Positions 8,280 to 57,300 of a stretch of DNA of 64,000 nt are shown one piece after another. Origin of the DNA: Mizuhopecten yessoensis (lineage: Eukaryota); contig NW_018405752.1 of assembly GCF_002113885.1 (NCBI RefSeq), forward strand, positions 7,288 to 71,287, written 5' to 3'. Numbering within the stretch: the stretch's first letter is position 1; every line of letters starts with the position of its first letter. Under the pieces are notes generated by a model. The model saw only the letters and a program-made list of their open reading frames with translations, was not told the origin of the DNA and did not search any database. Position numbers and translations under genes: made by a program.

Positions 8280-8490
8280 ATCGCTATCAAACGACGAAAT
8301 TATTAGAAAATGCGACGAATCGCCAGCTTATAAGAACCTTATAAGTAACCGGCTAACCTTAGACCTATTTACAATTTACATGTGGTTTCATCAGCCCGGA
8401 AGTAGTTTGCTAATCACAAAGCGAATAGCGGATGCGACCCATGAATTCCGGAAATAGAAGAAGCTTGCATACGTGTTACGTCAGAAATCT
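8280..8490. promoter_or_regulatory. Probable EPRS promoter region
   Basis: Immediately upstream of the ATG and locally CpG-rich, with ETS-type CCGGAAGT (~8396) and TTCCGGAAAT (~8446) and a CRE-like TTACGTCA (~8476). Confidence 0.5.
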
Positions 8491-28039: not shown

Positions 28040-28175
28040 GGGCAAACATTTGTCCGTTGTTGAGCTTCCGTTGGACGAACTGGACAGATGAGTTAGAAGC
28101 ACGTCAACAATACAAATACCCGTCGCCCAGCTCACGCAGACATTTCAGGAGGAGTGGGATAACGACCATATACAG
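28040..28175 (+). mobile_element. Tc1-like transposase C-terminal remnant (mirror copy at ~59885-60005)
   Basis: Translates to LDELDR*VRS...AQLTQTFQEEWDN, similar to the Tc1 WDELDRRVR...LQEEWDNI region. Confidence 0.4.
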
Positions 28176-28335
28176 GTTAATTGGTGTATGGTATAGAGGG
28201 TTTATAAACATCATATAGTTCTCTATGATTATACACCCAACCTTTAGACAGCCTTGACATAGTTCATCTAGTAACAATAACACAACTTCAGTCGTAATAA
28301 TATGATAACTAATTCGTAATAACGAGATCGCTTAA

Positions 28336-32700: not shown

Positions 32701-33239
32701 ATGAGAAACACGACTACATTCGTATTGGTGGAAGTATTTCTTTGGGATGTATCACTGCATCAGTATGTTTTATACATTTTATTGAATCAAATGAGGATTG
32801 ACTAGGGTAGAAATACTGAGATTCTCCCACGAGATTCGCCTCCAAGATCATCCGGCGCCATATAAACAGAAAATCAGTATATTTACACTTTCTGATAGAC
32901 TTTTGACTCTCTCCACCAAACCTTTAAAAAAACAAATAAAATTGATTCTTAGAACAAACTTGATATTTTAGCTCGTTCTGTCCTACGCCATTTGAAGTTA
33001 ACTCAAAGTACAAACTTTTACTGGCTCTGACCAGCGATGAAAGGTATTGTCCCTGTAACAACAGTGAAGGTTTAAATACAAGTAGAGAGCAGTGATGATG
33101 AACATAAACAAAGAGGGTATGTATCGGTTACAAAAAAGACATCTTACTTTAACTAGGCAAAAGGAAAAGAAACGTTGATTTTTTTGTTCGTTTGAAAATA
33201 ATACGTTTTTAAATTTAGACTCAATAGAGGGAATGATGT

Positions 33240-33660
33240 CCCTCACCACCACCACCGAATTCAGTATATGTCCCTGTTATTATGTGTGTGTTTTTTTAAC
33301 TCTAAAATGATCATATCAAAAAAAGCAATGTAGAGCGCCTTAAATAAAGAGAGCACCACCACCACCAAATTCAGTATATGTCCCTACTATTATGTGTATT
33401 TGTTATTCTATAACAATCATGTTATATAAGTATTGTAGAGCACCATGAAAAAGAGAGCACCGAACTAAATGTATCTATTATTATGGGGGGGCGGGGGTTG
33501 TTGTTACTCTTAAACGACCATATTTAAATTAAAGCTTTTTAACTATATGGAGCATCACCATCGCCATCACCGAACTCAGTATGTGTCACTGTTTTGACAT
33601 GTTTTGTAACTCTAAAGCGATTATATTATATAAGCAATTGAAAGCGCCTGAATTACAGAG
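33240..33660. repeat. Degenerate ~105-115-bp tandem repeat upstream of Rho gene A
   Basis: About 4 units of CACCGAATTCAGTATATGTCCC...AGAGCACC; about 2 units in arm B (~51170-51375). Confidence 0.65.
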
Positions 33661-33898
33661 AACACAAAACTGACGTTGTATATTACGATAGTAATACGTA
33701 TGTTATATGATATTCTTAGACATATCCAGGCTCAAATCAACATAAATGAAGCTGGATTAAATTGATATGACGCGTCTACGTAGTGAGTGCAAACATATAC
33801 CTGGATAAACGTTGATTTAACATACATTACCTGTATTTTCTTATCAAACTGTAACGATATATGAACACATCTGTTTGCCGCAACTAAATAGCTAGTTT

Positions 33899-33945
33899 CT
33901 GATTGGCTGTCTGTGGTCCAGAAATAGATAAGGTACATATAATGC
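33899..33945 (+). promoter_or_regulatory. Putative CCAAT box (reverse) and TATA-like element of Rho gene A
   Basis: CTGATTGGCT at ~33899 and TATAAT at 33938-33943, about 80 nt upstream of the ATG. Position conserved in copy B, where it reads TATAAAA. Confidence 0.5.
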
Positions 33946-34020
33946 GATAATCTCATTCCTCACTTTCATTTTAATACAACACTCTGTAGTGGAAGTACTA
34001 TACTAAATTTAATACTCACT

Positions 34021-35896
34021 ATGGTTAATGCAAGTAAACCTGTTAGTTGTACTCTCGTTGGCGATGGAATGGTTGGGAAGACATCTATCGCTCTCAGTTT
34101 TATCGGAAAACAGGCGGAAGAAAATTATGTGGCTACAGTATTCGAAAACTATGCAGGTAATAATCGTGACACTAATATAAAAGTTAAGGGTTTGCGTGGT
34201 GTCCAGGCGGGGTTTCAATATGTATCGATGAGTTTAAATTCTTTAAATGTATAATTCTTTAATATGCATGTGAATTAGATATGTTCAATTGTCGAAATGT
34301 TAATGTATATTTGTGTTAATCAAACTATGATATTTTCTTGTTTTGAAAATCTCTATAATATATAATATCAGAACTTCTCTGTAATAGAACATGACTTGTA
34401 TAACAGTTTAGTGTATAACTGATATCGAATTAAGTGGCAAAGGTAATAAATGTTTATTAGGACACTAGCTATGTTTCCTGTGGTAACTGACACCCGGGAC
34501 TTTTTTTTCTTCTATAATCAATGTTGAAACAAGTGTTTGAATTGTGATACTAGTAAAATAAAATAATTAATATTAAAATAATATAAGTCCTTTGTTATAT
34601 AAATAAGCTATTACAGCCATTAGTTGTGTTTTATATAAATTATGGAATGATATATTATATACGTTAACATTACGCTTGCTTTGTTTTTTCAGGAGGCACC
34701 TCAGTTGCCGGCGAGCAATATACTGTCAGCATCTATGATCCTGCAGGCAAGGTAAGCATCTTCACACATAACTGATCAACATCAATATATGTATCTTTAT
34801 ATAATGAATATAAAAAAAAACTAATCTTGTTAATCACAGGTATAGAATTCGTAATTTCTCTTCTTTATTCCTTAAGTATGAAAACAAAATAGATACGAAA
34901 GTGTAAAATGTATTTCAAAGCAAAACAGGTTTTAAAAGAAATTTATAAGGGGAAAACTTATTTTCGTCAAAGTTGGCCTAAAAACACAATTTTATTAAAA
35001 CTTTTATAAAGATAAATCAAAGAATTTGTAATAGAAAATTGGTAACATTATTAATAAACATATATTATCAGTGTCACTTATTTACGCTGGTTATATGATC
35101 ATACATAGCACGTGGTCATCTTAAGTTTAGATTTTATTATCATAAATATGGTGATAATAGTATCAGTTCGGCCTTGTTAACCGCTCAAACACTGAACGTT
35201 AAATTCATTACATTTTTATAATCACTTCAAAATATGTATTCCATAAGTAATAACGACAGTATGGTCCAATAAAGGAACTAGACTAGATCCAAAAAAAATT
35301 GTTGAATGCGTATTAGTTTATGTAACTAAATTACTAATTTGAAAAGTTGCTCTCTTATCAAATCATTGAACCTATCGTGAAAGAGGACTTTAATGTTGTA
35401 TATACATATATTTATTCATATAACATATCTCTATTTCAAACTTAACAAATATGACTAATACAAATCACATTACCTTTTCTAAAGCACTTGAAACTAATTA
35501 TAAAACTTTTGTTTTTTCCAGCATGACTATGCCAGTATGAGAGTCTGCACTTACACAGACTGCGAGGTGATTCTCATGTGCTACAACGTAAGCGATCGAG
35601 ACTCATTTGACAGCATCGCCTCATTTTGGCTACCGGAAGTAAGGAAATTTAGGGGCACCAAATCTACAGTCATTCTCGTAGCCACACAGACGGATACCCG
35701 GAATCCGGATTCCGACTCGTCAGTTAGTACAGAAGAAGGAGAGAAGTTGGCAAGGGAAATAAACGCTGGGGGATATATGGAAACCACTACCCAAAATTAC
35801 GATAGTGTTAAAACTGTTTTCGAAAAGGTAGTCACGTGTGCTTTAAAATGCAGGAAGAAAAAAAAAACACTCTTCAAAAAGATCTCTCGTCGTTAA
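34021..35896 (+). CDS. Atypical Rho-family (Cdc42/Rac-like) small GTPase, copy A, 189 aa
   Basis: Exons 34021-34156, 34693-34751, 35522-35896 (GT-AG, in frame). G1 GDGMVGKT, switch I YVATVFENY, G3 DPAGK, G4 TQTD. Polybasic tail, no CAAX. PolyA signal AATAAA at 36478-36483. Confidence 0.93.
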
Positions 35897-37429
35897 ACTA
35901 TCGGATATGAGGATATGAAGAACATTAAAACAATAGCAGCTATCCAGATGATTGGGAAAAGACAGAAGAAAAAATGAACAAAAATGTCTTTCAAAGACCT
36001 GTAGGACTTTCTTCATGTTTTGATGAATAGTTCGTCAAATGGACTTAACGAGAACGATACATGGGTGTTTTGAATTTTTGAAATAAAAGTCCCAGACTTT
36101 TTCAGATGGCAACGAAATAACACTGTGATGATCATTTGTAATAATAAGTACGATTCATGTCAGTGCATATAGTTTCAATAACTATAAAAACCCATTTGCG
36201 AATCGGAATATGTGATAATAATTTTGTATTTTCTTATCTCTATTTATTAATGACGATGTCGAATTTGAAATCATATTGATGACATATTCCGACCAAATGA
36301 ACTTCTGTATTTTACGTGAGACAGTGCTGACAATCCAGTATTTTTTTTATATACGTTTACATTATTGACAATGATGATATTCATCTGATTGATTTTGTTA
36401 CAAAGAGTATGTGCAATATTTGTTAAAAGTTTATTTTTACATGAACATAGCTGCTGGCCAGCACAACGAGTAAAGTCAATAAAACATTGAATTTGGATTT
36501 CTTTGTTTTGTGTTTTCCTTCCGAAATGTACCCAACAAGATCACACCAATGAATTGAGACTGTATGTAAATAAATTATAAATGTTTTTGTTAGATGAAAC
36601 TATGTTATATTTTCTAATTTATAGAGTAAACACCAATTACTATATTAACATTAATGCTTCTTCCTCTACGTGATTTATGAAATGGTCATGATAACACGTC
36701 ACCAATGAGAGGTAAAGGTAGAAACGATACATAGTATTCACTCCACGCATATATACAATTCTTCTGTAGCCTCGTTATGGATGGTCATATTTTGTCAACA
36801 GATACTTTGACGTTATGAAGAGCTTTTGGCAATACATTGACGGAGATGTTGTGAATTGTTCAGAAAAAGTAAGATGGGATGATACTGAAATATGTTGGCG
36901 GTAAGCGAGTGGGCAAATGAAACGAGGGTAAATCAAATGTATAACGAAGATATTATAGAAAAAATTAATATCTAACGACCGACTAAAAAACTAGCTACTT
37001 TCACCCTTCACATAGCTTTTCATGTTTATTTCAAAAGAAGAACAACTTCGTAACGTCACAATAACATGTCATCACACTACAATAGTAACGTGACATGACG
37101 AAGTACACAAGATTGGTGGACATACTAGCGGCAGACTTTTACTGTGGCCTGTTGAGAATTGGTTTTAATATTTTGATTAATTGGTCTTCTTTCTTTTCTC
37201 TTATAATAGTGTGTGATGAAAATAACGTATACAAAGGTAATAAATAGAGGATATTAAATGGTGTCTTCAGTAAAAACAAATATATTCCACGAATGTGGCT
37301 AATATTTTGATATTAAAAAATATAAAAATATTAGCCACACAAACGATGTCTTTGCGTTGTTATGTTTGGTAGGATATATCATTAAATATGTGCATTATGG
37401 TTTTGTTTGTTGTCACTACCCGGGTTCTC

Positions 37430-37650
37430 GATGTAAGGACGTGATATTACTTGGATTTGACCTTGATTTACGTGGCGGGTGTCGTTGTTGAAGCAGAAGA
37501 CGCTCACCCTCTAGGAACACCTGGTCTTATTCTCCCTGCTTTCTTTTTACAAGCGACTCCATGTTAATATTATTTTTGTTTATCCAAGTTTTATCGATTT
37601 TGGGTTCGAATAATTGTGTTGTTGACACTTTGGCTTTTTCCTGTTGTTTT
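37430..37650 (+). repeat. Dispersed short repeat, probably a Penelope-associated terminal repeat
   Basis: CTTGGATTTGACC...GAAGCAGAAGACGCTCACCCTCTAGGAACACCTGGTC; related copies at ~16330-16500, ~31670-31735, ~46130-46340, ~47130-47340 and ~52380-52580. Confidence 0.55.
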
Positions 37651-38039
37651 TACAAACATGATTTATGACACAACATATCATAAGTATAAGCTATTAAATG
37701 ATAAACGTTTGACAAACACATGTGATTATACCTATACAATTTGGTAATTTATACAGAACGCCATAAGGGATATACACTGTACCATACATTATTTTTTTGT
37801 TTTTCTATGACTCATTTGGTGATGCCAGGAACTAAATGGATGGAAATCAAAATTGGTATAAACTAACAGATTACATGTATACAGTTATGTTGTACATGAT
37901 TGACATTGTTCCTGGAATTTATTTTTTTATTTTCATAAGAATTCCTTCAATTATCGCATACTCAATGAGTCTCCATGGGAGATAAAACAAATGCCAGCAG
38001 CAGGTGTTGACAAAGGCAGCGAAGGAACAAGCTTGTGGT

Positions 38040-38525
38040 GATAATAACACGAGACAATAACACGAAAATAATAGCACAAGACAATAACACGAAAACAATA
38101 ACTAAAGACCCTGCTATCAAAACAATATCGCTAGATCATCTGATCAAAACATTGACACTTAAATTTGAGAAAAAAAAACAATAAACTTAATCAAAATACC
38201 AAAACAATTACAATATACCATAATACCAAAACAATGATACCAGACCAGGATACCAAAACGATAACACTTTACTCTGAGCCAAAACAATATACTAGCCCAA
38301 AATCCTAAAATAATTTAAGTCAAAACCAGAGCAATAGCACTAGATTCTAAGACCAAACGATATACCAACTCAATTACACTATACTATTAGACCAAAACCA
38401 TAACACCTTTTTTTTAATCTCTGATACCAAAACAATATACTAGGCGAACATAACAAAACAATTACAATATATCATGAAACAAAATCAATAACACTAAATA
38501 CTGAGGCCAAACATATAACACAAAA
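38040..38525. repeat. A/C-rich degenerate short-period tandem repeat
   Basis: Repeated (ACC)AAAACAATAACAC-like units; only the first ~90 bp are retained in arm B (46625-46715). Confidence 0.7.
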
Positions 38526-38744
38526 CTGTGCTTATAAGATAATGATTCTACATCAAGAAGTTTTCAATTATCTTGTTTAATTGGAATTCAGTACTTCAAG
38601 TGATTATTTTAAAATCATATTTCTATGGTTTTCATAAGTAATATGAGATTTCAAGTATTTTCCTGATTTTCGATAGACGAAAACCAACAAACAAATAAGC
38701 TTCTGCATTGCAATATTTCCGAATACCAACTAATGATAAGGATA

Positions 38745-39540
38745 CGGACCTGCCTCGTTTGTATTGGATTCCAAGATTTCGTAAGAATCTTTTATAAACA
38801 ACGTTTTATCGCTGTCTCTTCCAGTTACTCAACCAAGCCATTAACTAAACGTCCCACTACTATTTCCAGAACCACCAAATCAGGGTTACAGTCGTATTGG
38901 GATACTGTAAACTCAGGACGTGGAATAAACTACATGTGGATTTTCGTAAAAAAAAATCTTCTATCGAAACATTTGACCTTTCAACTCTTTACGCAACCAT
39001 ACATCATACCAGACTTGAGGAATGCATTCGTTCTCTTTTTATGAGAGCTTTCTTTTCATAGAAGGCCGAACGGCGATATAAATATATGGTTGTAAATTAG
39101 TTTGGAGCACATTTTGGGAATAGCACAACAAATACAAAATAAAATACAGGGAAGACGATATTGTGAGAATGAGTTTATGGTGTACAATTTCTAAGTTTAG
39201 TTCGGTTTCAAGATTCTCCAGCAGACTGTAGGCGTTCCTATGGGAACATACTGTATCCCTCCTCTGGACGAAGGTTTTTTCATATGAATCTGAATTTCAA
39301 ATAAGCTTATCAGGACTGGTAACAAAACCCTAGGCAAGTACATCAATTTCACATTCTGTTTTATCGACGATGAAAAACAAGAAATCCATTGACCACATCG
39401 ATCGTATATACCCTCCAGAGCTTGAAATCAGAGACACATCACAGACTCTTCTACTTCAGCCGCCTTCCTCGATCTTTACTTACAACATGACAAACAGGGA
39501 CGGCTTACTACTAAGCTATACGATAAGTAGGACGACTTAT
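38745..39540 (+). pseudogene. Penelope-like retroelement reverse transcriptase remnant
   Basis: Frameshifted motifs LPRLYWIP...YKQRFIA...STKPL, TFDLSTLYATI, QQTVGVPMGT, INFTFCFIDD, IYPPELEIRDT. A downstream part (FDFPIVNFPFL) survives in arm B at ~46400-46620 minus. Confidence 0.8.
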
Positions 39541-40389
39541 AATGGTCTCCATTTAAATCTTTATGTCTTAATATTTTGTAATAGTTTTATCGATTTTGGG
39601 TTTGAATTTTGGTTTTGTTAACACTTCGGTATTGTTTTTATTGTAGGGGAGGTCGGCCGGGGGAAAAGGCAGCGCTCGTTTTGTTGTTGTCCTGCATCTA
39701 ATGAATATGTTAATATTTTTCATTATTCATGTTTGATGTTTGATTGAACATAACATCAAAGTCAGTATTGCCTACGTGTTGGACAATGCATAAAGTATCG
39801 TGACAAGAAAGACAACTCGAGCTTTATTTCATATGTCTATTTCTAACGAATCATAAAGCACGAGTTTATTGCGCGGACGAATATATTCACGAGTTCGCGG
39901 AGCGCAACGAGTGAATAAATACGTCCGCGCAATAAATGATCGTGTGTGTGGTCTTGCTTTTATCACATACCTTCAGTATTTGGTAGAGATCGATGGCTTT
40001 TCTGCATTATCATTTGAAGCTGTCAGTATGTTACACGTTTGACTGTAAAAAAAGTAGCAATTCCGTTTCAAAAAGTTCGCATAACTAGAAGCGTGATCAT
40101 GATTTTCTTTCTACCCTCTCAAAAGTAATTTTACATTAGAGTTTTCCACGACATTTTTTCGTTCAATGCCCAGCCAACTAAACTGCTAAGATCCTTAAAG
40201 ATGTAAATATTAGCTCAAAAACAAAAATATCAGGGGTGGCCGAACTTGCCCCGGTTTACCGTATATAGATTTTTGTATCATTGATGATCGGTAAAAATGT
40301 ATTCACAATATATTTTTAACATCAATGACGCCATTTTCTTCCAGTTAAAGCTAAAGTAGACATTTGTTCTTGTGCGTAACGTATATGAT

Positions 40390-40600
40390 GGGTCGGGTAG
40401 CGCAGTGGATAGCGCGCTCGTCTTCACCAAGATGGCCGGATTCAATCCCGGTCACCTTCCCGACCACGCGGGTTTTCTCCGGATACTCCAGCTACCTCCC
40501 ACATTAAGAATTAAATCCTCTGCGTGCTTCCGTAAGGGCACAAAAAGAATGATTGAGATAAATTTGGGAAAAAACTGTTTGGTAATTACTATAGAAAAAG
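40390..40600 (+). mobile_element. tRNA-derived SINE with V-domain-like core
   Basis: A-box TAGCGCAGTGG, B-box GGATTCAATCC, core GGGTTTTCTCCGGATACTCCAGCTACCTCCCACA. Confidence 0.7.
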
Positions 40601-43600
40601 TCTATATTACATATTTGACAATTAGTCTAAGTAAATGTATAGAGATGTAGGTTAAAAAAGAAATTAAAAAAGAAAACAATGTAATACTTTAATGTAACTG
40701 AGATCGTCGTTATATTGATATGTAGTCTCAAGCACTGTTCCATCCTGAAACAACGTATTGAATATCAAATTTTGTAACTGTCACCGAGGTTTGACAGGTT
40801 ATGATGCCAAATAGAATTTAACAGTTTCTGTCTGTAACTAGTTATAATTCGGCACGCGTTGTTTAGAAGGGCGTTGAACTCGGGTTGGTTGTCTGGAAAA
40901 TTATTGTTAATTTCGTCATAAATGCATTAACCATTGTTTCTTTTACGAGTGGTGATGCATACATAAATTATGTAAAGTCTATAACAAGACTTTCAAAAAT
41001 GTGAATTTTTTCGTTCATATTCAACAAATGGAAATCAAAAGCTGATGAAATGTTTAGATGATAAAAACATAAATGTACACTTTGACCTATTGGTTTAATG
41101 CCGGCTCTTTTTGAAGATATCTCCCGGTAAAAATATTAACAGAACCTGGTTGATGACAAAAAGGATCTCCAGAAAATATCCCCATTTTCACTTTTTGTGC
41201 CGTGACAAAAACTGAAATAAAAATAATCTTGAAGCGCCGACAAAGAGATAAATGCAACGGGCATCAGTTCCAGAATTTTCCGGTTATTTTTCATCCTTCC
41301 GGAAACAACCGATGAAGGCCGATGGATTGTGACGTGTTTGTGACGTCATAGTATGATAATCTCCGAACAAAGTTTGCCTGTTAGTAGCAGATTTTATGTG
41401 AATGACTTTTTGATTCAGAATGTATATTAGTTTTTATCTCAATAAACAAGTAATAAAACATGAAGATTGTTTTCACTATTTGAAAATGTTCGTGTATGGG
41501 TTGAAACACAGTTGTCTTTGCTTCAAGAATGCACTTCCTTTTTCCCCACTGGACGTCTACTTCCGGACTGAAAAAAATAAAGGCAAAGTGTAGCAAGGGG
41601 AAACAACTCTGTTTACGCACGCATGTGTTACCATAAAAGAGCTTCGATCGGGCGCCTTCGGCTACGCTCTTATTACAAATGTGTTTGTTTCTTCTGCAAT
41701 TTGTTTGAGGTAATATGTTTTACGGCACGGCCGTTAGTGAGGGCGGAGCCAGGTTGTACTGTTAATGTATCGGAATATCGGAACTGTACTCTTTCAAGCA
41801 TTGCGTAATGTGTTAAATCACTAAATCAGACCTACATGTATCGCTATACAGTGTATATAACAGTTAAGTTTCCTTTCTTGATTTCTTTTTTGGCTGACGA
41901 GATGTTTGATATCTTGAAGTTTTCCGCCTAGGCGTATGATGACATGACATTAATGTGAGAATGCGAAAGGTTCATTAGACTATATAAGTATTTAAATTTG
42001 CACCTCTTGAATCAATTACAAAAATCAAGTGCAGCATATTCTAGAAAGACATTGAAATAAAACATATTAGGAAGGATATTGTTAATCATGTATAATAGCA
42101 TAGTTATCTGATATCCACGAAAAGATATATACATATATATATATGAATATATCTTTACAAATAAGCCCTTTGGATTACTTCAAACTTAACTTCAATGATT
42201 TATAAATATTGCATCCAGAGATAATTTATGCAAAGTATTTTACAATTGTTTTTGTGCTTTTTATGTGTAAAAATTAATTTGTTCAATGCTATAAAACTGG
42301 ATTTATATGAAGTTTCTATTAAAATAAGAAGCATATGCGAAATCACAATTTTTGTCATTTTTCAATACCCATCATTGCAGTCAAGAGAGTCAATAGATCT
42401 ATATATCATATATATATTGTGGATGAATACATTTGTTTCAGCAACTTACTGACTATATGCTTTATATGTCTCTGCTTTATTATAGTTTTAGCAATAGAGA
42501 AAATGTATTGTTTCCTCAATTAGAAATTGAATTAGTTCAGCACATAAATATATATTTTTTAATCGTCCAGATTTGTAAAACAGCAGATTTTCTTTTATGA
42601 ATAAAAAAATAGCTGTGAGATAGTAATCAAAAATTAAAATGTTACAGTATGGATTCAATTTTTTTCTTCAGTCTATTTTTTTTATGAAAAATATCAATAA
42701 AAAAATTCTTATGAAAATACTTGTATGTTTTTTTATCCTATCATTTTGCTTCACTGTGAAAAAATCCCTTTTTGTTGACAACCAGCACGCTGTTTTGTTG
42801 ATATTCCGTTTTCTAAATATATACCACTGCAATCTCTACCCAGACTTGTCGTAGGGAGTGCAAGGACCGTAACTCTGCGTGACTCTGCGTGATAGTCTCG
42901 TTCAACCAGACTCTTGTTGTCTGCGCAAGCGTCTGATTGAACGAGACTACACTGCCGATACAATAATTTTTCGACCATTCAGAACTAGAGCAATGTAGCC
43001 GGTCAAGAGAATTTACATCTTTAACCAAATCAAATATTTGAGTATCCTATAGTTAGATATAATTTTTAAATCTTACAAAAATGTAACGTTTGTTCGAGAT
43101 TCGGCAAACGAGAACTTGTTTAGAGATCATGATGGCGGAGACTACAGCGCGTGCGACTGGCGGCCATGTTAAGACAAGTTTTTCAGTTCCATAGGTATTG
43201 TGAATAATCTTTATTTTTCTTACATACGTGTTACCTATAGGATGAGCTTCGCTCTCACGGGCCCTTCGGGCCCGTGAGAGAGCTCCGCCCTCTATAATGG
43301 TAGAATGGTTAGACTATATAGTCTTCTATTTACATTCTTGATGTTTGTTCTGTACATGAATCTACCAAGTGAAAACAACTGCCATTTGACCATGAATAAA
43401 CTATAAATACAACGATTATCGTGCAACCTGTCAGCTAATTTCACACACAATTACAAATTATATTATTGTGCATAAAACCGTTTCTGAGAAGAGTTATCTC
43501 GCCTTCTCCGAGATAACGTAGTAGCGAGAAATAATAATAAGCATTACAAAAATCATAAATGGTGCACCATTGTACTATTATTATTATTTTTTATTTAAAA

Positions 43601-44119
43601 TTTAAAAAAAACATATTTATACCATTGTCATATTAAATACTGACTTCCGACTCGCAATCGGTTCCTCGTGGTCAAGACCTACTTTCTAACACCCAAACGT
43701 CCGGTTGGGTAAACTCCGTGACAGTTTACCCTGAGAACTTTGTAATGGCACAGCACACTTCATCCATCGATTTATCATCATTTACATCAGCAGGTGTTTT
43801 TGGTAAACAGCACAGGTGTGCTGGATGGTTACTATGCAATCGTTACCACTCGGTCATTTCCGTAACCGAAATGAAAGTAATATCAAGTGTTGGTTGTTAT
43901 CAGATTCTAGATAATCAGCTGATCGGCGGAAGTTCAACTTTTGAAGTTTGTGTGTAGGCTGGAGTTCTGTCCGATGCTAGTATCAAAAATGATAAATTTA
44001 CAAAAAGTGTTGTAACTTTTTTTTATTGTAGTTCACCGTAATGAAAATATATGAATTGAATGGATTTTTCCATGTACATTGCGGCAATGAATAGCAGTAG
44101 CTGATCTCCATATCTTCTG

Positions 44120-44357
44120 AGGAGCGCTTTAATGTATTTGAAAAAAATCCATTCAAACCCTATATGTGTTATAAAAATAAAACATCAAGCGTTCACCAAT
44201 TCTAGCACTGCCAAACCACGTACTCATTTACAGCTGAGTAGATTGGAACAAGCAGAGCAAAGTATCTTGCTCAAAGATACAACACAGTGCCGTGACTCGA
44301 ACCCGCAACCCTTCGGTCGTGAGTCCGGCGTCCTACCACTAGACTGCCGTGTCCCCT
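44120..44357 (-). mobile_element. tRNA-derived SINE (same family as 62433-62789)
   Basis: Minus strand GGGGACACGGCAGTCTAGTGGTAGGAC...GGGTTCGAGTCAC, then core TACTCAGCTGTAAATGAGTAC. Confidence 0.8.
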
Positions 44358-44951
44358 AGTTTATCACAACTGTTTTTAAACTGTGTTAACCACTATGAAT
44401 TGATCAACAAGAAATCACACTGTTTAATAAAATAAGGGTGCTGAAAAAAATTCACAGCTCACTGTCTCCATGCCACGGCATATACAGGCGATGTTAAAGT
44501 AACCTTTGTGTAGTTGGTACATACATGAATGCACTAATGTCTACGTAAACGTCATCGTGAGTGAGAGGTTTTCATTAGATGAGTGTATTGCACGGACCTT
44601 TCGTCCACTTCCCTGCACGTATCATCCAACTCCCCAGTCCTAACTCACTCTTCACTCATCGCTCGGACAGAGCTGTTCATATGCATAACAGCCCTGGTAA
44701 GTATTTGTCTATGTCTTTGTGTAACTTACATCATGTAATATACAATAATTGTTGCCCATTGTCAGTATAGACCGTAGCTATTTCTACTGTATATTTCCTG
44801 TGTTCCTGTCAAATGTCTAAGTCTATATATTGTATGTTGTAGGCTCCCTTTCTGTATATAACGAACCATTAGAAAGAAGAAACGAGTCTGTTTTGTTGTT
44901 AGACTGGAATACTCTGTTACAATCCAACATGGCGCCCCAATGTAACATAAC

Positions 44952-45201
44952 TGGAAATTAAATGAGTTTGTTTCCAAAAGCGAAATTTGATATAGATTCC
45001 ATGAACTTAACTTCTACTTAGGGTTCAATTTAGATGACGTCAGTAATCACGTGATTCAGTCTTCAGAGTCTGTAACACGAATTCTCATACTTCAACTGGG
45101 TGGGGAAAACCCCGGGTCGGGCAATTGAACCCTAAGTAGAAGTTAAGTTCATGGAATTTATATCAAATTTTGCTTTCGGAAGAAAACTCATTTAATTTCC
45201 A
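44952..45201. repeat. ~79-bp inverted repeat with ~92-bp spacer
   Basis: 44952-45030 is the near-perfect reverse complement of 45123-45201. Confidence 0.85.
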
Positions 45202-48200
45202 ATTCCATGAACTTAACCTACGTAAGGTCCAAATGAGATTTCAGAGATGAGATTCGTGTTACGGTAATACTCAGATACATTGTGTACAGAAATCAGAAAT
45301 CAATACATAATTTAAATTGTAACTGTATGTTTTTCTATTTACAGGTAATATATACATGTGCATGATCAGCCCATAAAGTTAACAGTCTTATGATCATGAT
45401 CTATTGGCAGTGCGCTTCAGCAATATCCCACTGCTAACACTCAATGCACTGTCTGTTGGTATGTTCGAACACTGAGCTAGTCCCGTTGTCACATACTGTC
45501 GTTACAATAATACAGCCAACACCTCTTTCAATTTCAATTCACCCAGCTCGTTTACATTCCAACCGCATCGTGACCTGATCACCTGATGATCTTAGCCGCT
45601 GCACAGCCGTTGCTTATCGGTCAGCTACCTTCGCGAACACGGACTAACTTTTTGTAACTTAAATACATCACTGGTTATTCACACGGCGTTTTTGTATTTT
45701 ACGTGAAAAAAAACTACTTCTTCTTAATTTTATAAGATTGAAATGCATTTTTTTAACATTTACGTGGGTATGAAACACAGTTCCGTTCAAACATATTCTC
45801 CAAGATGCGAGAACGCGAATCTTGGAGAATATGTTTGAACGGAACTGTGTTGCATACCCTAATAAATGTAAAAACAAATATGCATTTTAAACATTAAACA
45901 ACAACATTTGCCTTCTCAATGAATGGCATTATAGTCATATGAAATAAAGCTCGAGTTGTCTTTCTTGTCACTATACTTTATGCATTGACCAACACGTAGG
46001 CAATACTGACTTTGATGTTATGTTCAATCAAACATGAATGATGAAAAATATTAACAGATTCATTAGATGCAGGACAAAAACAAAACGTGCTCTGCCATGT
46101 ATCCCGGCCGGCCTCCCCTACAATAAAAACAATACCAAAGTGTCAACAAAAACAAAATTCAAACTCAAAATCGATAAAACTCTTGCAAAATATTAAAACA
46201 GAAAGATTTAAATGGAGACAATTAAAAAAATGCAATGAGAATAAAATCAGGTGTTCCAGAAAGTGTAAGAATCTTCAGATTCATCGACGACATATCCGCC
46301 ATGTAAATCTAGGTCAATTCAAGTAATGTCACGTCCTCACATCGGGCAGAGACAACAAAACCACAAGGCATTGCATATACATCTTTCACGGAAGTCAAGA
46401 TTCTCGGAGCAAGCTCTTGAGAACCGAATCAACTGCGACATAATAGCACCGTAAATAGGGGGATACACGTCTGTTACTATAAAGAAAGGGAAAGTTCACA
46501 ATCGGGAAGTCGAAGTCGTTCTACTTATCGTATAGTTTAGTAGTAAGCCGTCCCTGTTGGTCATGTTGTAAGTAAAGATCAAGGAAGGCGACTGAAGTAG
46601 AAGAGTCTGTGTCTCTGATTGTCTTTAATTATTGTTTTCGTGTTATTGTATTGTGCTATTGTTTTCGTGTTATTGTCTCGTGTTATTGTTTTCGTGTTAT
46701 TGTCTCGTGTTATTATCACCACAAGCTTGTTCCTTCGCTGCCTTTGTCAATACCTGCTGCTGGCATTTTTTTTTTTTTTTATCTCCCATGGAGACTCATT
46801 GAGTATGCGATAATTGAAGGAATTCTTACGAAATAAAAAACAAAATTCCAGGATCAATGTCAACCATGTACATCATAACTGTATACATGCAATCTGTTAG
46901 TTTATACCAATTTTGATTTCCATCCATTTAGTTCCTGGCATCACCAAATGAGTCATACAAAAACAAAAACAATATTGTATGGGACAGTGTATATCCTTTT
47001 TGGCGTTCTGTATAAATTACCAAATTGTATAGGTATAATCACATGTGTTTGTCAAACGTTTATCATTTAATAGCTTATACTTATGATATGTTGTATTATA
47101 AATCATGTTTGTAAAAACAACAGGATAATACCAAAGTGTCAACAACACAATTATTCGAACTCAAAATCGAGAAAACTTGGATAAACAAAAATAATATTAA
47201 CATGGAGCCGCTTGTAAAAAGGAAGCAGGGAGAATAAGACCAGGTGTTCCTAGAGGGTAAGCGTCTTCTGCTTCAACAACGACACCCGCCACGTAAATCA
47301 AGGTCAAATCCAAGTAATATCACGTCCTCACATCGAGAACCCGGGTAGTGACAACAAACCCGCCAATGCACATATTTAATGATATATCCTACCATACATA
47401 ACAACGCAAAGAAGACGTTTGTGTGGCTAATATTTTGATATTTTTCAATATCAAAATATTAGCCACACTCGTGAAATATATTTGTTTTTACTGAAGACAC
47501 CGTTAAATATCCTCTATTTATTACCTTTGTATACATTATTTTCATCACACACTATTCTAAAAGAAAAGAAAGAATACCAATTAATCAAAATATTAAAACC
47601 AAGTCTCAACAGGCCACAGTAAAAGTTTGCCACTAGTTTTGTCCACCAATCTTGTGTACTTCTTCATGTCACGTTACTATTGTAGTGTGATGACATGTAA
47701 TTTTGACGTCACGAAGTTGTTCTTCTTTTTAAATAAATATGAAAAGACATGTGAAGGGTGAAAGCAGCTAGTTTTTTAGTCGGTCGTTAGATATTATTTT
47801 TTTCGATATCATCTTCGATATACATTTGATTTACCCTCGTTTCATTTGCCCACTCGCTTACCGCCAACATATTTCAGTATCATCCCATCTTACCATTTTT
47901 TTGAACAATTCATAACATCTCCGTCAATGGATTGCCAAATGTGTTTTCATAACGTCAAAGTATCTGTTGACAAAATATGACCATCCAGAAGGCTACAGAA
48001 GAATTGTATATATGCGTGTAGTGAATACTATGTATCGTTTCTACCTTTACCTCTCATTGGTGACGTGTTATCATGACCATTTCATAAAACACGTAGAGGA
48101 AAAAGCATTAATGTTAATATAGTAATTGGTGTTTACTCCTTACATACAGTCTCAATTCATAGGTGTGATCTTGTTGGGTACATTTCGGAAGGAAAACACA

Positions 48201-48823
48201 AAGACAAAGAATTCCAAATTCAATGTTTTATTGACTTTACTAGTTGTGCTGGCCAGCAGCTATGTACATGTAAACAATAAACTTTTAACAAATATTGCAC
48301 ATACTCCTTGTAACAAAATCAATCAGATAAATATCATCATTGTCAATACTGTAAACGTATATAAAAAAAATACTGGATTGTCAGCACTGTCTCACGTATA
48401 ATACAGAAGTTCATTTGGCCGGAATATGTCATCAATATGATTTCAAATTCGACATCGTCATTAATAAATAGAGATAAGAAAATACAAAATTATTATCACA
48501 TATTCCGATTCGCAAATTATGCTAATGGGTTTTTATAGTTATTTAAACTATATGCACTGACATGAATCGTACTTATTATTACAAATGATCATCACAGGTT
48601 TATTTCGTTGTCATCTAAAACAATCTGGGACTTTTCTTTCAAAAGTTTAAAACACCCATGTATCGTTCTCGTTAAGTCCATTTGACGAACTATTCATCAA
48701 AACATGAAGAAAGTCCTACAGGTCTTGGAACGACATTTTTGTTCATTTTTTCTTCTGTCTTTTCCCAATCATCTGGATAGCTGCTATTGTTTTAATGTTC
48801 TTCATATCCTCATATCCGATAGT

Positions 48824-50775
48824 TTAACGACGAAAGATCTTTTTGAAGAGTGTGTTTTTCTTCTTTCTGCATTTTAAAGCACACGTGACTACCTTCTCGA
48901 AAACAGTTTTAACACTATCGTAATTTTGGGTAGTAGTTTCCATATATCCCCCAGCGTTTATTTCCCTTGCCAACTTCTCTCCTTCTTCTGTACTAACTGA
49001 CGAGTCGGAATCCGGATTCCGGGTATCCGTCTGTGTGGCTACTAGAATGACTGTAGATTTGGTGCCCCTAAATTTCCTTATTTCCGGTAGCCAAAATGAG
49101 GCGATGCTGTCAAATGAGTCTCGATCGCTTACGTTGTAGCACATGAGAATCACCTCACAGTCTGTGTAAGTGCAGACTCTCATACTGGCATAGTCATGCT
49201 GAAAAAAACCAAAAGTTTTATAATTAGTTTCAAGTGCTTTAGAAAAGGTAATGTGATTTGTATTAGTCATATTTGTTAAGTTTGAAGTAGAGATATGTTA
49301 TATGAATAAATATATGTATATACAACATTAAAGTCCTCTTTCACGATAGGTTCAATGATTTGATAAGAGAGCAACTTTTCAAATTAGTAATTTAGTTACA
49401 TAAACTAATACGCATTCAACAATTTTTTTTGGATCTAGTCTAGTTCCTTTATTGGACCATACTGTCGTTATTACTTATGGTATACATATTTTGAAGTGAT
49501 TATAAAAACGTAATGAATTTAACGTTCAGTATTTGTGAGGTTACCAAGGCCGAACTGATACTATTATCACCATGTTTATGATAATAAAATATAAACTTGT
49601 GATGACCACGTGCTATGTATGATCATATGACCAGCGTAAATAAGTGACACTGATAATATATGTTTATCCTAACTCTGGTTATCTTTCCAAGTAATTGACA
49701 CCTAAAAATATTTTTTTTTAATAATGTAACCAATTTTCTATTACAAAGTCATTGATTTATCGATATAAAAGATTTAATAAAATTGTGTTTTTAGGCCAAC
49801 TTTGACGAAAATAAGTTTTTCCCTTATATATTTCTTTTAAAACCTGTTATGCTTTGAAATACATTTTACACTTTCGCACTTTCGTATTTATTTTGTTTGT
49901 ATACTTAAACCATAAAGAAGAGAAATTACGAATTCTATACCTGTGATTAACAAGATTAATTTTTTTATTTATTATATAAAGATACATATATATTAATGTT
50001 AATCACTTATGTGTGAAGATGCTTACCTGGCCAGCAGGATCGTAGATGCTGACAGTATATTGCTCGCCGGCAACTGAGGTGCCTCCTGAAAAAACAAAGC
50101 AAGCATAATGTTAACGGATATAAAATATCATTCCATAATTTATATAAAACACACGTAATGGCTGTAACAGCTTATTTATATAACAGAGGATTTAAATTGT
50201 CTATATTTTAATAGCATCACAATTTAAGAACTTGTTTAAACATTGCTTATATAATAAAACAAATCCTAGGTGTCACAGTTACCACAGGAAACATAACTAG
50301 TGTCCTAATAAACATATATTACCTTTGACACTTAATTCGATATCAGTTATACACTAAATTGTTATAAAAGTCATGTTCTATTACAGAGTAGTACTGATAT
50401 TAGATATTATAGAGATTTTCAAAACAAGAAAATATCATAGTTTGATTAACACAAATATACATTAATATTTCGACAATTGAACATACCTAATGAACATGCA
50501 TATGAAAGAATTATACATTTAAAGAATTTAAACTCATCGATACATATTGAAACCCCGCCTGGGCACATGTACCCACACCAACTTCGTGCTTTGACAACAC
50601 GCAAACCCTTAACTTTTATATCAGTGTCACGATTATTACCTGCATAGTTTTCGAATACTGTAGCCACATAATTTTCTTCCGCCTGTTTTCCGATAAAACT
50701 GAGAGCGATAGATGTCTTCCCAACCATTCCATCGCCAACGAGAGTACAACTAACAGGTTTACTTGCAGTAACCAT
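48824..50775 (-). CDS. Atypical Rho-family (Cdc42/Rac-like) small GTPase, copy B, 189 aa
   Basis: Exons 50775-50640, 50085-50027, 49198-48824 (GT-AG, in frame). G3 DPAGQ; five amino-acid differences from copy A. PolyA signal at 48232-48227. Confidence 0.93.
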
Positions 50776-53700
50776 GATGAGTATTAAATTTAGTATAGTA
50801 CTTCCACTACAGAGTGTTGTATTAAAATGAAAGTGAGGAATGAGATTATCGCATTTTATATACCTTGTCTATTTCTGGACCACAGACAGCCAATCAGAAA
50901 CTAGCTATTTAGTTTCAGTGTGGCTAGGCTTTCCGCGTAGCGGCAAACAAATGTGTTCACATATCGATACAGTTTGATAAGAAAAATACAGGTAATGTAT
51001 GTTAAATCAACGTTTATCCAGGTATATGTTTGCACTCAATACGTAGACGCGTCATATCAATTTAATCCAGCTTCATTTATGTTGATTTGAGCCTGGATAT
51101 GTGTAAGAATATCATATAACATACATTATGTATTATAATCGTAATATACAACGTCAGTTTAGCGTTCTCTGTAATTCAGGCGCTTTCAATTGATTATATA
51201 ATATAATCGCTTTAGAGTTACAAAACATGTCAAAACAGTGACACATACTGTGTTCGGTGATGGCGATGGTAATGCTTCATATACTAAAAACCTTTCATTT
51301 AAATATGATCGTTTTAGAGTTACAAAAAAACACAATAACAGGGACATATACTGAATTCGGTGGTGGTGAGGGACATCATTATTTTATCATATAAAGTCAT
51401 CTAAATTCGCTCACTTATTAAAACAACCTCTATTGAGTATAAATTTATAAACGTATTATTTGCAAACGAACAAAAAAATCAATGTTTCTTTTCCTTTTGC
51501 CTAGTTAAAGTAAGATGTCTTTTTTTTAACCGATACATACCCTCTTTGTTTATGTTCATCATCACTGCTCTCTTCTTGTATTTAAACCTTCACTGTTGTT
51601 ACAGGGAAAATACCTTTCTGTTTATATGGCGCCGGATGTTCTTGGAGGCAAATATTGTGGGAGAACCTCAGTATTTCTACCCTAGTCAATCCTCATTTGA
51701 CTCAATAAAATGTATAAAACATACTGATGCAGTGATACATCCCAAAGAAATACTTACACCAATACGAATGTAGTCGTGTTTCTCATCATTAGAACTGCGT
51801 AAAAATATAACGAAATTCCATATTTAAACACGTCATGAGGATGAAACTTTATATATATTTTATAACTTGACTAAACAAGAATATCGACAAAGAACACTCC
51901 AAATTCAGATGCCCAAGTAGACATTTTAATCATTTCCATCAGGTCTACAACAGAAATACGCGAACCTTCGTTTGATGAGCAAATGGGAGTACTTCAATCT
52001 TGAATAATGTTTTGCATTGTGTAAATTAGTGTCGCTGCTTTTTTTTTTTATAAATACCGTAATATCCCTGTGAAGACCTGAGTTTAGTGTATCTACTATC
52101 TAGCTCCCAGTGCGAAACTACGTTTGGGGTCTCATACCCGGTAGCTCTCCAGCTCATCAATAACTCACACTCAATACTATACCTGAACTTCCCTTTACTC
52201 AATTGTTTATATCGATTGGTCAACTCTGATAACGTGACATAGCTGAACGTGCTTATTTTGCTAACGACAAAGGTATATCAAATTTAATATCTGTCATAGG
52301 ATAGTATTTCTTTATTACACTCCCCCTATCCCCCTTATCTATATATAGATCAGGATACGCAGGCAAGAAAACAACAAAAGAATACCGGAGTGTCAACAAA
52401 ACCATAATCCTAGCTCAAAATCGATAAACTATGGCAAAATATGAACAAAGGAATGATTTTCACGGAAAAGTACAATGAGAATAAGTCCATGTGTTCTGGA
52501 AGAGTAGGCATCTTCTGCTTTATCGACAACACCAAACATATGAATTTAGGTCAAATCCAAGTCATGTCACTTCCTCACATCAAAAACATCACATATAGCT
52601 ACTGACCCGCTCTTCCTCTTTACACATGCATGCATCAATCTATTTTAGTGCCTGGTAAGCTAATTACTTGATGTGATTAAACTGGAATTAAATTAATATG
52701 TATATGCATTATGACGACAATGTATGCGTTGATAGGGACATCTCTGACACCTTTCTACATTTGCATAAGGAAACAATTCTATCAAAGTTTTGCATCACTA
52801 CAAGTTTTATGATTGCTTGTATCGACATAAAATGTCTTATCAAATATGTTAAATACCTATCATGAACGAAGTTTATCGTTGCATATGACACAAGTCTTTC
52901 GCAATAATATTAAATTGATTAAACAGAATTAAAAAGACGAATTAACTAAATCAGCATTAATTGGAGTGCATAATACTTCGGCAAGAATTACTCGGTATTC
53001 TATACACTTGGAAATGAAAACATCCTAGTACGCCTTATACGATGAAACATCAATACCATTCACGATAGTTACTCACGATACTAATATAATCGTGCTCTAG
53101 TCATTCGCTGTAATAGAGGTAAAGTGAGATTCGTTTTGACTTGTCATATAGTAGAAACAATACACACAAAACATAAATGAACATGAACTATATATAAAGT
53201 GTCACTTGGTATTACACGAATGTTGCCATAAATAAACTTGACATGCTATAAACATAATCGATGGTACTTACTATATCACACGTTTAATGCATGCAAAGCC
53301 AATTTATAACAATGTTTATCTATAAATATAAATCACTCTACGCACGGTTTTACATTTACATACTGTTGAAATACGTTACTTAGAGTTTTTGTTATGAGTT
53401 TTTGCGGGATTTCGATTAGCCATAACTATCTTTAGTTCACCAATGGTGAAAGCTACAGAAAGCAAAACTTAAATGGTTAATACTAATATCTCTAAACATT
53501 TCGAAGCATTCGATTGACGGTGAACATAATTTTACAAATGAATACATTTTGTAAAAATAGTATTATATTATATAGCAGTTATTTATCCTCAAAAATTCAA
53601 ACAGAGTTGCATACGAAATAGGAAAAGTCTATTTGATAAGACTTGTTCTTGTTTTTAGTGTGGTATCGACTGATTTGAAAATAATCCTATTTAATATAAA

Positions 53701-54047
53701 CTTTATTTCATTCCAAATTAAGTTGCATTACATCACATAACATACAAAGTACAGAGGAATGGGATCCGGAAACAAGTTGAAATAACTTATATAAATCCGT
53801 TTTCCGAGAATTTATCTCATTAATTTAAGGCATGATGGCATAGTTACTGAATTCTATGGAAAGCAATATAAACACTTAAAACAGTAGCTAACTTTTAAAC
53901 ATAGTTCAAGGGATATTTGAAATGAGAGTAAAAGAAAAGGGGTACAGGGGGAGGGGGGGGTGGGGGTATAGATGCCCGTGCCAAAAAGAATAGAAGGAGA
54001 AGAAATAGGTGATGTGAAACAAAGGATCGTTGTATAATGAATAGAAC

Positions 54048-57247: not shown

Positions 57248-57300
57248 GGGACCAGGATTGAGTTCTATATCTCCAGATAACAACAAATGCCAATAGTCCA
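57248..57300 (-). other. 2A-like (StopGo) ribosome-skipping peptide at the LINE ORF2 N-terminus
   Basis: DYWHLLLSGDIELNPGP matches the D(V/I)ExNPG-P consensus directly upstream of the APE domain. Confidence 0.8.

What the first reader, a model, noticed from the sequence alone, without database searches (positions are those of the whole stretch)
34021..50775. Convergent paralog pair of atypical Rho GTPases differing at the catalytic Gln61 position (K vs Q)
Seen: both copies are intact 189-aa genes differing at only five residues (N3T, K65Q, PEV/PEI, KKKKT/KKKNT, ISRR/IFRR). One difference is the last codon of exon 2: AAG in copy A (34749-34751, DPAGK) vs CAG in copy B (50029-50027, DPAGQ). Established: this is the Ras/Rho Gln61 catalytic residue, and Q61K/L substitutions impair GTP hydrolysis and lock the protein on. 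Inference: a recent duplication produced one switchable and one potentially constitutively active paralog side by side. Two further differences fall in the membrane-binding tail.
Basis: partly seen in the sequence, partly recalled or inferred. Interest (0 to 1): 0.8.

Follow-up and report, generated by a model that had tools for sequence, protein, structure and literature searches.

The report
Scallop Rho-like gene pair, K versus Q
The Yesso scallop carries two nearly identical, tail-to-tail copies of an unusual Rho-type switch protein, and one copy has replaced the glutamine needed to turn the switch off with lysine; the change is real and transcribed, but its effect on the protein is untested.

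Summary
The window is Mizuhopecten yessoensis scaffold NEDP02002425.1. Copy A (+, 34021-35896) and copy B (-, 50775-48824) are intact three-exon, 189-aa genes, already public as XP_021352819 and XP_021352841. They differ at exactly the five residues listed. Residue 65 aligns with RhoA Gln63.

New here:
- The genes lie in a 12-kb inverted duplication that is about 95-97% identical throughout.
- All five amino-acid changes, K65 included, arose in copy A. Copy B keeps the ancestral sequence.
- dN/dS between the copies is 0.17.
- AAG is present in another individual's DNA and in a spliced RNA contig. Copy B is also transcribed.
- S187 was seen only in the reference.
- Ylistrum balloti has the same convergent pair next to the same neighbouring gene, with a gene-conversion tract. 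There the other positional copy carries His at this site. The pair is therefore probably old and was homogenised, not recently born.
- The proteins belong to a mollusc-wide Rho-like clade with no CAAX box and no insert helix. This clade is absent from the published bivalve Rho census.

That copy A is locked on is a reasonable but untested inference. Interest is moderate.

The parts
34021..34156 (+). Copy A exon 1 (codons 1-45 plus 1 nt; P-loop GDGMVGKT, switch I YVATVFENY; N3)
   Evidence: Pfam Ras, E 1.5e-5. An A-type RNA contig (X15, record 9) and an A-type DNA contig (X1, record 1) cover it.
34693..34751 (+). Copy A exon 2, ending in codon 65 AAG (Lys) at 34749-34751, followed by a gtaagc donor
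   Evidence: AAG is present in X2 DNA (record 24, no differing letter) and in a spliced X15 RNA contig.
35522..35896 (+). Copy A exon 3 (codons 66-189 plus stop; V105, TQTD, ETTTQ, K180, S187)
   Evidence: Pfam Ras, E 2.5e-18. X1, X2 and X15 contigs show V105 and K180 but F187.
50640..50775 (-). Copy B exon 1 (T3)
   Evidence: The B-type RNA contig X19 record 15 carries 34028 A>C, which gives T3.
50027..50085 (-). Copy B exon 2, ending in codon 65 CAG (Gln) at 50029-50027
   Evidence: The X19 RNA contig carries ...GGCCAG joined to exon 3 and is spliced at both introns.
48824..49198 (-). Copy B exon 3 (I105, N180, F187) plus stop
   Evidence: Copy B is identical to P0001 / XP_021352841.
27918..39840 (.). 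Left arm of the inverted duplication, carrying copy A with about 6 kb upstream and about 4 kb downstream
   Evidence: Identity is about 0.95-0.97 in most of the well-aligned 300-nt windows.
45931..60133 (.). Right arm of the inverted duplication, carrying copy B and interrupted at about 53692-57721 by an arm-specific insertion that holds a reverse-transcriptase ORF
   Evidence: PF00078 product at about window 54048-55631, minus strand.
39841..45930 (.). Unique 6-kb spacer between the arms; no ORF of 120 aa or more
3235..8432 (-). Exons of the neighbouring glutamyl-prolyl-tRNA synthetase (EPRS) gene, used as the synteny anchor showing that copy A is the EPRS-proximal copy
   Evidence: tblastx is collinear with the Ylistrum EPRS exons that lie head-to-head with P0003.

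Best explanation
This is a genuine convergent pair of paralogous genes in the arms of a 12-kb inverted duplication in the Yesso scallop genome. Both encode a 189-aa member of a mollusc-wide clade of Cdc42/Rho-like small GTPases that has not been described. The clade has the Rho core fold but no insert helix and no CAAX box. Its last helix runs into a basic-hydrophobic tail (ALKCRKKKxTLFKKIFRR), which probably binds membranes without a lipid anchor.

Copy B keeps the ancestral sequence, including the catalytic Gln65, so it should hydrolyse GTP and cycle. Copy A, the copy next to EPRS, acquired every polarisable change. These include Q65K at the residue that positions the attacking water. By analogy with Ras Q61K/L, RhoA Q63L and the natural Rnd/RhoH proteins, Q65K should strongly reduce intrinsic and GAP-stimulated hydrolysis, leaving copy A mostly GTP-bound.

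Shown here: gene structure, the duplication, polarity of the changes, purifying selection, presence of AAG in other individuals, and transcription of both types.

Inferred: the loss of hydrolysis, membrane binding by the tail, and the idea that the pair is an old one homogenised by arm-to-arm gene conversion.
For: Structure and identity of the genes.

The duplication is real:
- The arms have defined inner and outer ends that run into unrelated unique sequence, with no N gap at the boundaries.
- Only one arm carries a retrotransposon insertion.
- A-type and B-type contigs both occur in two independent DNA runs (records 6/7 and 25/26).
- Ylistrum balloti has the same layout: EPRS, then a copy on one strand, then a copy on the other.

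Residue 65 is RhoA Gln63. The AlphaFold model has pLDDT 88. Its best structural matches are RhoA and the insert-less EhRho1, with TM 0.8-0.9.

Polarity: the orthologues carry T/I3, Q65 (one has H), I105, N180 and F187, and they match copy B at 5 of the 8 synonymous sites.

Selection: dN/dS is 0.17, P = 0.002 against neutrality.

Conservation of Q: all but four (E, H, H, K) of the nearest bivalve sequences keep it.

Expression: a spliced K-type contig in X15 and a fully spliced Q-type contig in X19.

Effect of position-61 changes: Rho proteins mutated at position 61 are GTPase-deficient, and the Rnd/RhoH proteins are natural GTPase-deficient Rho members whose GTPase cannot be stimulated by GAPs (PMC6321241).
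Against: - No biochemical data exist for any member of this clade.
- Both copies have Pro at the Thr58 position and ETTTQ in place of the ECSAK G5 box, so nucleotide handling may already be unusual in copy B.
- Across the wider clade the position is variable (Q, E, H, K, L), so hydrolysis may matter less here than in classical Rho proteins.
- All changes, synonymous ones included, sit on copy A (10:0). Selection on the protein does not explain this.
- In the only run with K-type RNA, intron 1 of copy A is partly covered and no exon 1-exon 2 joint was seen. A complete K-type mRNA is therefore not demonstrated.
- Only contigs, not raw reads, were available, so neither copy number by depth nor allele frequencies could be measured.
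Confidence: 0.55

Rival explanations
1. Copy A is a redundant duplicate drifting under relaxed constraint, at an early stage of decay. Q65K, N180K and F187S would then be slightly deleterious or neutral hits with no new role, and the protein contributes little.
For: Every polarisable change is on copy A and none is on B. The changes hit a catalytic residue conserved in the nearest subclade and a hydrophobic tail position conserved across the clade. Copy A's TATA-like box differs from B's canonical TATAAAA. Intron 1 of copy A appears retained in the one K-type RNA run.
Against: The ORF and all splice sites are intact. dN/dS is 0.17 (P = 0.002). On the A branch alone there are 5 non-synonymous against at least 5 synonymous changes (P = 0.047). 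K-type RNA is present with intron 2 spliced. S187, the most damaging-looking change, is only a polymorphism.
Confidence: 0.25
2. K65 does not lock the protein on. In this clade hydrolysis would not depend on the cis glutamine, for example because a dedicated GAP supplies the catalytic residue in trans as RapGAP does for Rap (own knowledge). Alternatively the altered G5 box makes both proteins fast-exchanging or weak nucleotide binders. Either way A and B would be functionally equivalent.
For: Across representatives of the wider clade the position holds Q, E, H, K or L. The other scallop members found on the same scaffold or chromosome as the pair carry E or K. Both copies carry ETTTQ instead of ECSAK, and DPAG instead of DTAG.
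Against: In the subclade closest to A and B, all but four sequences (E, H, H, K) keep Q, which argues that the residue is used. The remaining catalytic set is intact in both copies: the P-loop Gly16 and Lys20, Thr39, Asp61 and Gly64.
Confidence: 0.15
3. The two 'paralogs' are the two haplotypes of one locus, wrongly assembled as an inverted repeat. K and Q would then be alleles.
For: The assembly comes from a heterozygous bivalve. Arm divergence of about 4% with indels could be allelic. Contig depths (A-only about 10-12, B-only about 17, shared about 22) fit either model. Copy number could not be measured because only contigs were served.
Against: The arms end in four different unique sequences and have no gaps at their ends. 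Both types occur in two unrelated individuals. An independent assembly of another scallop genus has the same convergent two-gene layout beside EPRS.
Confidence: 0.05

Closest known systems
Human RhoA / Cdc42 (classical Rho GTPases)
   Same: These are the best sequence matches (E 3e-33) and the best fold matches (TM 0.8-0.87). Shared features are the P-loop, the switch I threonine, DxxG(Q), and a Cdc42-type TQxD G4 box.
   Different: Only 35-38% identity. Nine residues are missing where the Rho insert lies and no insert helix is predicted. There is no CAAX box. The G5 box is ETTTQ. Pro replaces Thr58 and His replaces Glu62.
Rnd1-3/RhoE and RhoH (natural GTPase-deficient atypical Rho proteins)
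   Same: Copy A departs from the residues that Rho proteins need for GTP hydrolysis: it has lost the catalytic Gln at the position-61 equivalent. Rnd and RhoH proteins are GTPase-deficient and are not stimulated by GAPs (PMC6321241). Rnd3 is among the fold matches (1gwn).
   Different: Rnd and RhoH proteins are prenylated through a CAAX box and are old, separate subfamilies. Here the change is a single recent substitution in one of two copies that are 97% identical. The Gly12 equivalent is kept.
Ras Q61K/L/H and Rho Q61L/Q63L mutants
   Same: The same position and, for Q61K, the same residue. These mutants are GTPase-deficient and constitutively active (PMC6321241; the Q61K oncogenic allele is own knowledge).
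   Different: Those are somatic or engineered mutations in canonical switches. This is a germline, transcribed gene copy in an atypical background.
Entamoeba histolytica EhRho1 (PDB 3reg, 4dvg)
   Same: A Rho-family protein among the best fold matches (TMt 0.90-0.93). That EhRho1 lacks the insert helix is own knowledge.
   Different: Unrelated lineage and 35% identity. This match says nothing about the K/Q issue.
Published bivalve Rho census (Li et al. 2015, PMC4669188)
   Same: It covers the same species and the same superfamily.
   Different: [quoted passage not shown] It does not include this 189-aa clade.

Membership tests
Rho family of small GTPases | Ras-superfamily G domain with P-loop GxxxxGK[ST], switch I Thr and G3 DxxG | tested here: met
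   Pfam Ras PF00071 on exons 1 and 3 of both copies. GDGMVGKT, YVATVFENY and DPAG are present in both.
Rho family of small GTPases | Closest sequence and fold relatives are Rho/Rac/Cdc42 proteins | tested here: met
   All 60 best PDB sequence matches are Rho-family proteins. The best 50 Foldseek matches are all RhoA, RhoB/C/D, Rac, Cdc42, Rnd3 or protist and fungal Rho proteins.
Rho family of small GTPases | Rho insert helix between G4 and G5 | tested here: not met
   There is a 9-residue gap against RhoA at the insert. The model has no helix of 4 or more residues in 121-134.
Rho family of small GTPases | C-terminal CAAX (or CCxx) lipidation box | tested here: not met
   The two proteins end ...KKIFRR and ...KKISRR. 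Sequences showing the clade's GDGMVGKT-type P-loop and basic ...LKRxFxR-type tail have no CAAX box.
Rho family of small GTPases | G5 box [C]SA[KL] | tested here: not met
   ETTTQ in both copies and ETT(I/T)Q in the other scallop orthologues. More distant clade members have ECSA.
GTPase-deficient atypical Rho proteins (Rnd/RhoH type) | Non-canonical residue at the Gly12 and/or Gln61 equivalent | tested here: met
   Copy A has Lys65 at the Gln61/63 equivalent. Copy B has Gln65. Gly16, the Gly12 equivalent, is kept in both.
GTPase-deficient atypical Rho proteins (Rnd/RhoH type) | No measurable GTP hydrolysis; constitutively GTP-bound | not testable with these tools
   This needs recombinant protein assays.
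Mollusc CAAX-less Rho-like clade (operational, defined here) | GDGMVGKT P-loop, short insert, His after residue 65, tail ALKxRKKKxxxhxxhhxR, restricted to bivalves and gastropods | tested here: met
   Alignments. The taxa are Magallana, Mytilus, Potamilus, Sinanodonta, Mercenaria, Mya, Dreissena, Solemya, Tegillarca, Aplysia, Haliotis and Lottia.

The most novel reading that the evidence does not exclude
The convergent pair is an old, positionally conserved module of scallop genomes, and gene conversion keeps the two copies alike. Against that homogenising force, one member has lost the catalytic glutamine independently in at least two lineages: Lys in the EPRS-proximal copy of Mizuhopecten and His in the EPRS-distal copy of Ylistrum. 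This would mean selection repeatedly favours having one cycling and one hydrolysis-dead version of the same GTPase side by side, as a built-in constitutive partner or competitor for shared effectors and GAPs.
Probability: 0.15. Interest if true: 0.6.

Novelty: new member of a known kind. Interest (0 to 1): 0.42.

Why it matters
If the K copy really is hydrolysis-dead, the pair is a natural, near-isogenic experiment. The two proteins are 97% identical, are transcribed from near-identical promoters, and differ at the catalytic glutamine. That is a clean system for asking what a locked-on Rho-like protein does in an animal, and how such atypical GTPases (Rnd and RhoH in vertebrates) arise from cycling ancestors.

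The work also flags a mollusc-wide Rho-like clade, with no CAAX box and no insert helix, that the published bivalve Rho census missed. It gives an example of concerted evolution in an inverted gene pair. None of this overturns current understanding, because natural substitutions at position 61 in Rho proteins are well known.

Tried and rejected
1. Depth-based copy number. Every run served was Logan contigs, so depth is one figure per contig. The stretch laid also lay wholly inside an arm. The depths seen (A-only 10-12, B-only about 17, shared about 22) fit both paralogs and alleles, so this test failed.

2. Reading haplotypes from the long exon 3 contigs of X1, X2 and X15. They look like A/B mosaics. 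I treat phasing beyond 31 nt as unreliable because contig building drops one branch at each variant. I used only variant combinations that lie within 31 nt (35854-35866-35886).

3. Patchy gene conversion inside the M. yessoensis arms. Sliding identity is about 95-97% in most well-aligned windows and shows no clear conversion patches. No evidence was found in this species. A tract was found in Ylistrum.

4. A second copy, or EPRS, downstream of the Argopecten orthologue. Nothing was found within 10 kb, so Argopecten could not date the duplication.

5. The TQTD G4 box as an anomaly. Rejected, because Cdc42-type Rho proteins use TQxD (own knowledge) and most clade members have it.

6. Literature searches for this clade or this pair found only the 2015 census, which omits it.

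7. The joined three-exon model was never typed or assembled. Exons were searched separately by reference. Full-length work used the database proteins P0001 and P0006, which the tools returned and which equal the models.
Full report
**What is there**

The window is part of Mizuhopecten yessoensis scaffold NEDP02002425.1 of assembly GCA_002113885.2. Window position 1 is record position 7288.

Copy A lies on the + strand, with exons 34021-34156, 34693-34751 and 35522-35896. Copy B lies on the - strand, with exons 50775-50640, 50085-50027 and 49198-48824. All introns are GT..AG. Both copies encode 189 residues without a stop.

I searched the exons separately by reference (Pfam Ras family on exons 1 and 3 of both copies; word search with exon 3). 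I never joined the exons myself. The searches returned two public proteins, P0006 (XP_021352819, OWF50809) and P0001 (XP_021352841, OWF50810). These are identical to the spliced models of A and B, and I used them for all full-length work.

The coding sequences differ at 13 of 570 nt. Five differences change the protein: N3/T3, K65/Q65, V105/I105, K180/N180 and S187/F187.

**Is residue 65 the catalytic glutamine?**

Yes. In the phmmer alignment to RhoA (E 3e-33), DPAGQ of the scallop protein sits on DTAGQ, ending at RhoA Gln63.

An AlphaFold model (pLDDT 88) has the Rho core fold. Its best matches are RhoA and EhRho1, with TM 0.8-0.9. EhRho1 lacks the insert helix (own knowledge).

The C-to-A change sits at position -3 of the exon 2 donor, where both letters fit the MAG|GT consensus (own knowledge). 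Splicing therefore does not constrain it.

**What kind of protein is it?**

It is Rho-like by sequence and fold, but it fails three textbook Rho features:
- Nine residues are missing at the insert and no insert helix is predicted.
- There is no CAAX box. The last helix (158-188) runs into the basic-hydrophobic tail ALKCRKKKxTLFKKIFRR.
- The G5 box is ETTTQ instead of ECSAK.

The TQTD G4 box is normal for the Cdc42 branch (own knowledge).

Relatives with the same P-loop (GDGMVGKT), short insert and tail occur across bivalves and gastropods, often as gene clusters. The 2015 census of bivalve Rho genes lists nine Yesso scallop genes of 192-707 aa and does not contain this clade (PMC4669188).

**The duplication**

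The genes lie in inverted arms, 27918-39840 and 60133-45931, separated by a 6-kb unique spacer. Substitution identity is about 95-97% in most of the well-aligned 300-nt windows. The right arm alone carries a 4-kb insertion with a reverse-transcriptase ORF.

The arms end in four unrelated unique sequences, and there are no N gaps at their ends. A-type and B-type contigs both occur in the DNA of two independent individuals (35062-35270). Together with the synteny described next, this makes a haplotype mis-assembly unlikely. I put it at about 5%. Copy number by read depth could not be measured, because only contigs were served.

**Age of the pair**

In Ylistrum balloti, an independent assembly shows this order: EPRS on one strand, P0003 (Q65) head-to-head with it, P0002 (H65) convergent to P0003, then a 197-aa paralog.

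In the window, EPRS exons lie at 3235-8432 on the - strand, collinear with the Ylistrum exons. Copy A is therefore the EPRS-proximal copy, the positional match of P0003. Copy B is the positional match of P0002.

The Ylistrum copies are 84% identical in protein. At the nucleotide level they differ at about 18-27% of sites in the 3' half of exon 3, and their exon 1 regions are 77% identical. Yet the last ~90 nt of intron 2 plus the first ~190 nt of exon 3 are virtually identical, with 1 difference in about 280 nt. That is a clear gene-conversion tract.

The simplest reading is an old convergent pair that undergoes concerted evolution. The M. yessoensis arms would then have been homogenised, or re-duplicated, about 4% divergence ago. 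'A recent duplication' is therefore only one of two possibilities, and I think it the less likely.

The non-Gln residue sits in different positional copies in the two species, K in the proximal and H in the distal. It requires different single-base changes from CAG, so the two losses are independent.

**Polarity and selection**

The orthologues in Ylistrum and Argopecten carry T/I3, Q65, I105, N180 and F187. All five protein changes therefore arose on copy A, and the tree gives copy B a zero-length branch.

Five of the eight synonymous differences are also derived on A, none is derived on B, and three are ambiguous. This 10:0 asymmetry (two-sided P about 0.002) is not explained by selection on the protein. 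I leave it as unexplained. Part of it comes from variants private to the reference copy A, described under the reads evidence.

For the pair, dN/dS is 0.17 (dN 0.011, dS 0.068), P = 0.002 against neutrality. On the A branch alone, 5 non-synonymous against at least 5 synonymous changes gives P = 0.047. Copy A is still under purifying selection, though the support is modest.

In the bivalve subclade nearest to A and B (D[ST]AGQH with switch I VATVFENY), all but four sequences keep Gln; the exceptions carry E, H, H and K. Across the wider clade the position holds Q, E, H, K or L, and the other scallop members found on the same scaffold or chromosome carry E or K.

**Reads evidence (one call allowed; contigs only)**

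- DNA of X2, an independent 2025 study: record 24 covers 34706-34851 with no differing letter, so the AAG codon and the two A-type synonymous sites beside it are present.
- X15: a 913-nt contig joins ...GGCAAG at 34751 to 35522 across intron 2, so K-type spliced RNA exists. The same run has A-type contigs inside intron 1 and none showing the exon 1-exon 2 joint. A complete K-type mRNA is therefore not shown.
- X19 (RNA): an 816-nt contig spliced at both introns carries T3, ...GGCCAG (Q65), N180 and F187, so copy B is transcribed.
- Fixation of the other differences: in X1, X2 and X15 the variants 35854A, 35860A, 35866A and 35886T occur together within 31 nt. A copy-A haplotype with K180 and F187 is therefore real. 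The reference's 35563C, 35854G and 35886C (S187) were seen in none of the four other runs, and 35677C was not seen in X1, X2 or X19 (X15 shows no difference there). X1 and X2 carry G at 35639 (V105), because all of their listed differences are accounted for elsewhere.
- Net result: K65, V105 and K180 recur in other animals, and S187 looks like a polymorphism of the sequenced animal.

**Mechanism**

Shown: one copy has the full catalytic set and the other lacks only the glutamine.

Established elsewhere: substitutions at position 61 give GTPase-deficient, constitutively active Rho proteins, and the Rnd and RhoH proteins are natural GTPase-deficient Rho members whose GTPase cannot be stimulated by GAPs (PMC6321241).

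Inferred: copy A is mostly GTP-bound while copy B cycles. I give this about 0.55.

The rivals, with the weight I give each:
- Copy A is drifting under relaxed constraint (0.25).
- The clade does not rely on the cis glutamine, or both copies already handle nucleotide unusually because of Pro62 and the ETTTQ box (0.15).
- Assembly artefact (0.05).

**Verdict**

The genes are already in public annotation. Natural position-61 variants of Rho proteins are a known kind, so this is a new member of a known kind, sitting in a clade that has not been described. Interest is moderate (0.42). It would rise if the 'one cycling, one locked' arrangement proves recurrent and selected in scallops.

Noticed in passing
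L002:10774-11256 and L002:19389-19871 (Ylistrum balloti): The convergent Ylistrum paralogs share a virtually identical tract of about 280 nt (the last ~90 nt of intron 2 plus the first ~190 nt of exon 3). It is flanked by about 18-27% divergence, which marks a recent gene-conversion event between inverted copies.
   Followed up: yes
window 34157-34692 (intron 1 of copy A): In the one run with K-type RNA (X15), A-type contigs cover parts of intron 1 (34298-34477 and 34629-34692) at about half the exon depth, while intron 2 is empty. No exon 1-exon 2 joint of the K type was seen. The splice sites are identical to those of copy B. This may be intron retention or pre-mRNA.
   Followed up: partly
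window 35242-35279 (intron 2 of copy A): A stretch of about 35 nt has a contig depth of 356-475, against about 21 around it, in two DNA runs. Many different sequences flank it, so it is a fragment of a very high-copy repeat.
   Followed up: no
window 53692-57721, ORF at about 54048-55631 (-): A 4-kb insertion is present only in the right arm. It holds a 527-aa reverse-transcriptase (PF00078) product, so a retroelement inserted after the arms were last identical.
   Followed up: partly
window 33930-33945 and 50864-50850: The promoter-proximal regions are about 97% identical and share a CCAAT-type ATTGG box. Copy B has a canonical TATATAAAA, whereas copy A reads TACATATAA. This is a possible cause of different expression levels.
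   Followed up: no
window 3235-8432 (-) and 24628-26645 (+): Exons of the glutamyl-prolyl-tRNA synthetase gene lie upstream of copy A on the - strand. The public annotation also calls a separate 146-aa WHEP-TRS product on the + strand at 24628-26645, which may be a duplicated fragment.
   Followed up: partly
coding sequences of copies A and B (sites listed): Ten of the 13 coding differences, synonymous ones included, are derived on copy A and none is clearly derived on copy B. Four of the ten (35563C, 35677C, 35854G, 35886C) look private to the reference animal. The remaining asymmetry is unexplained.
   Followed up: partly
same scaffold as the window, outside it (P0235, P0237); L002:1-290; L004:522-1616: Scallops hold a cluster of related CAAX-less Rho-like genes. 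These include 187-aa DSAGEH and 189-aa DMAGEH types, and a 197-aa type with a degenerate G3 box (DCSSK). In this cluster only the A/B type keeps the catalytic Gln.
   Followed up: partly
L002:15673-15822 (+): A short fragment resembling the 3' part of exon 3 (46% over 63 aa) lies between the two Ylistrum copies. It is probably a pseudogene remnant.
   Followed up: no
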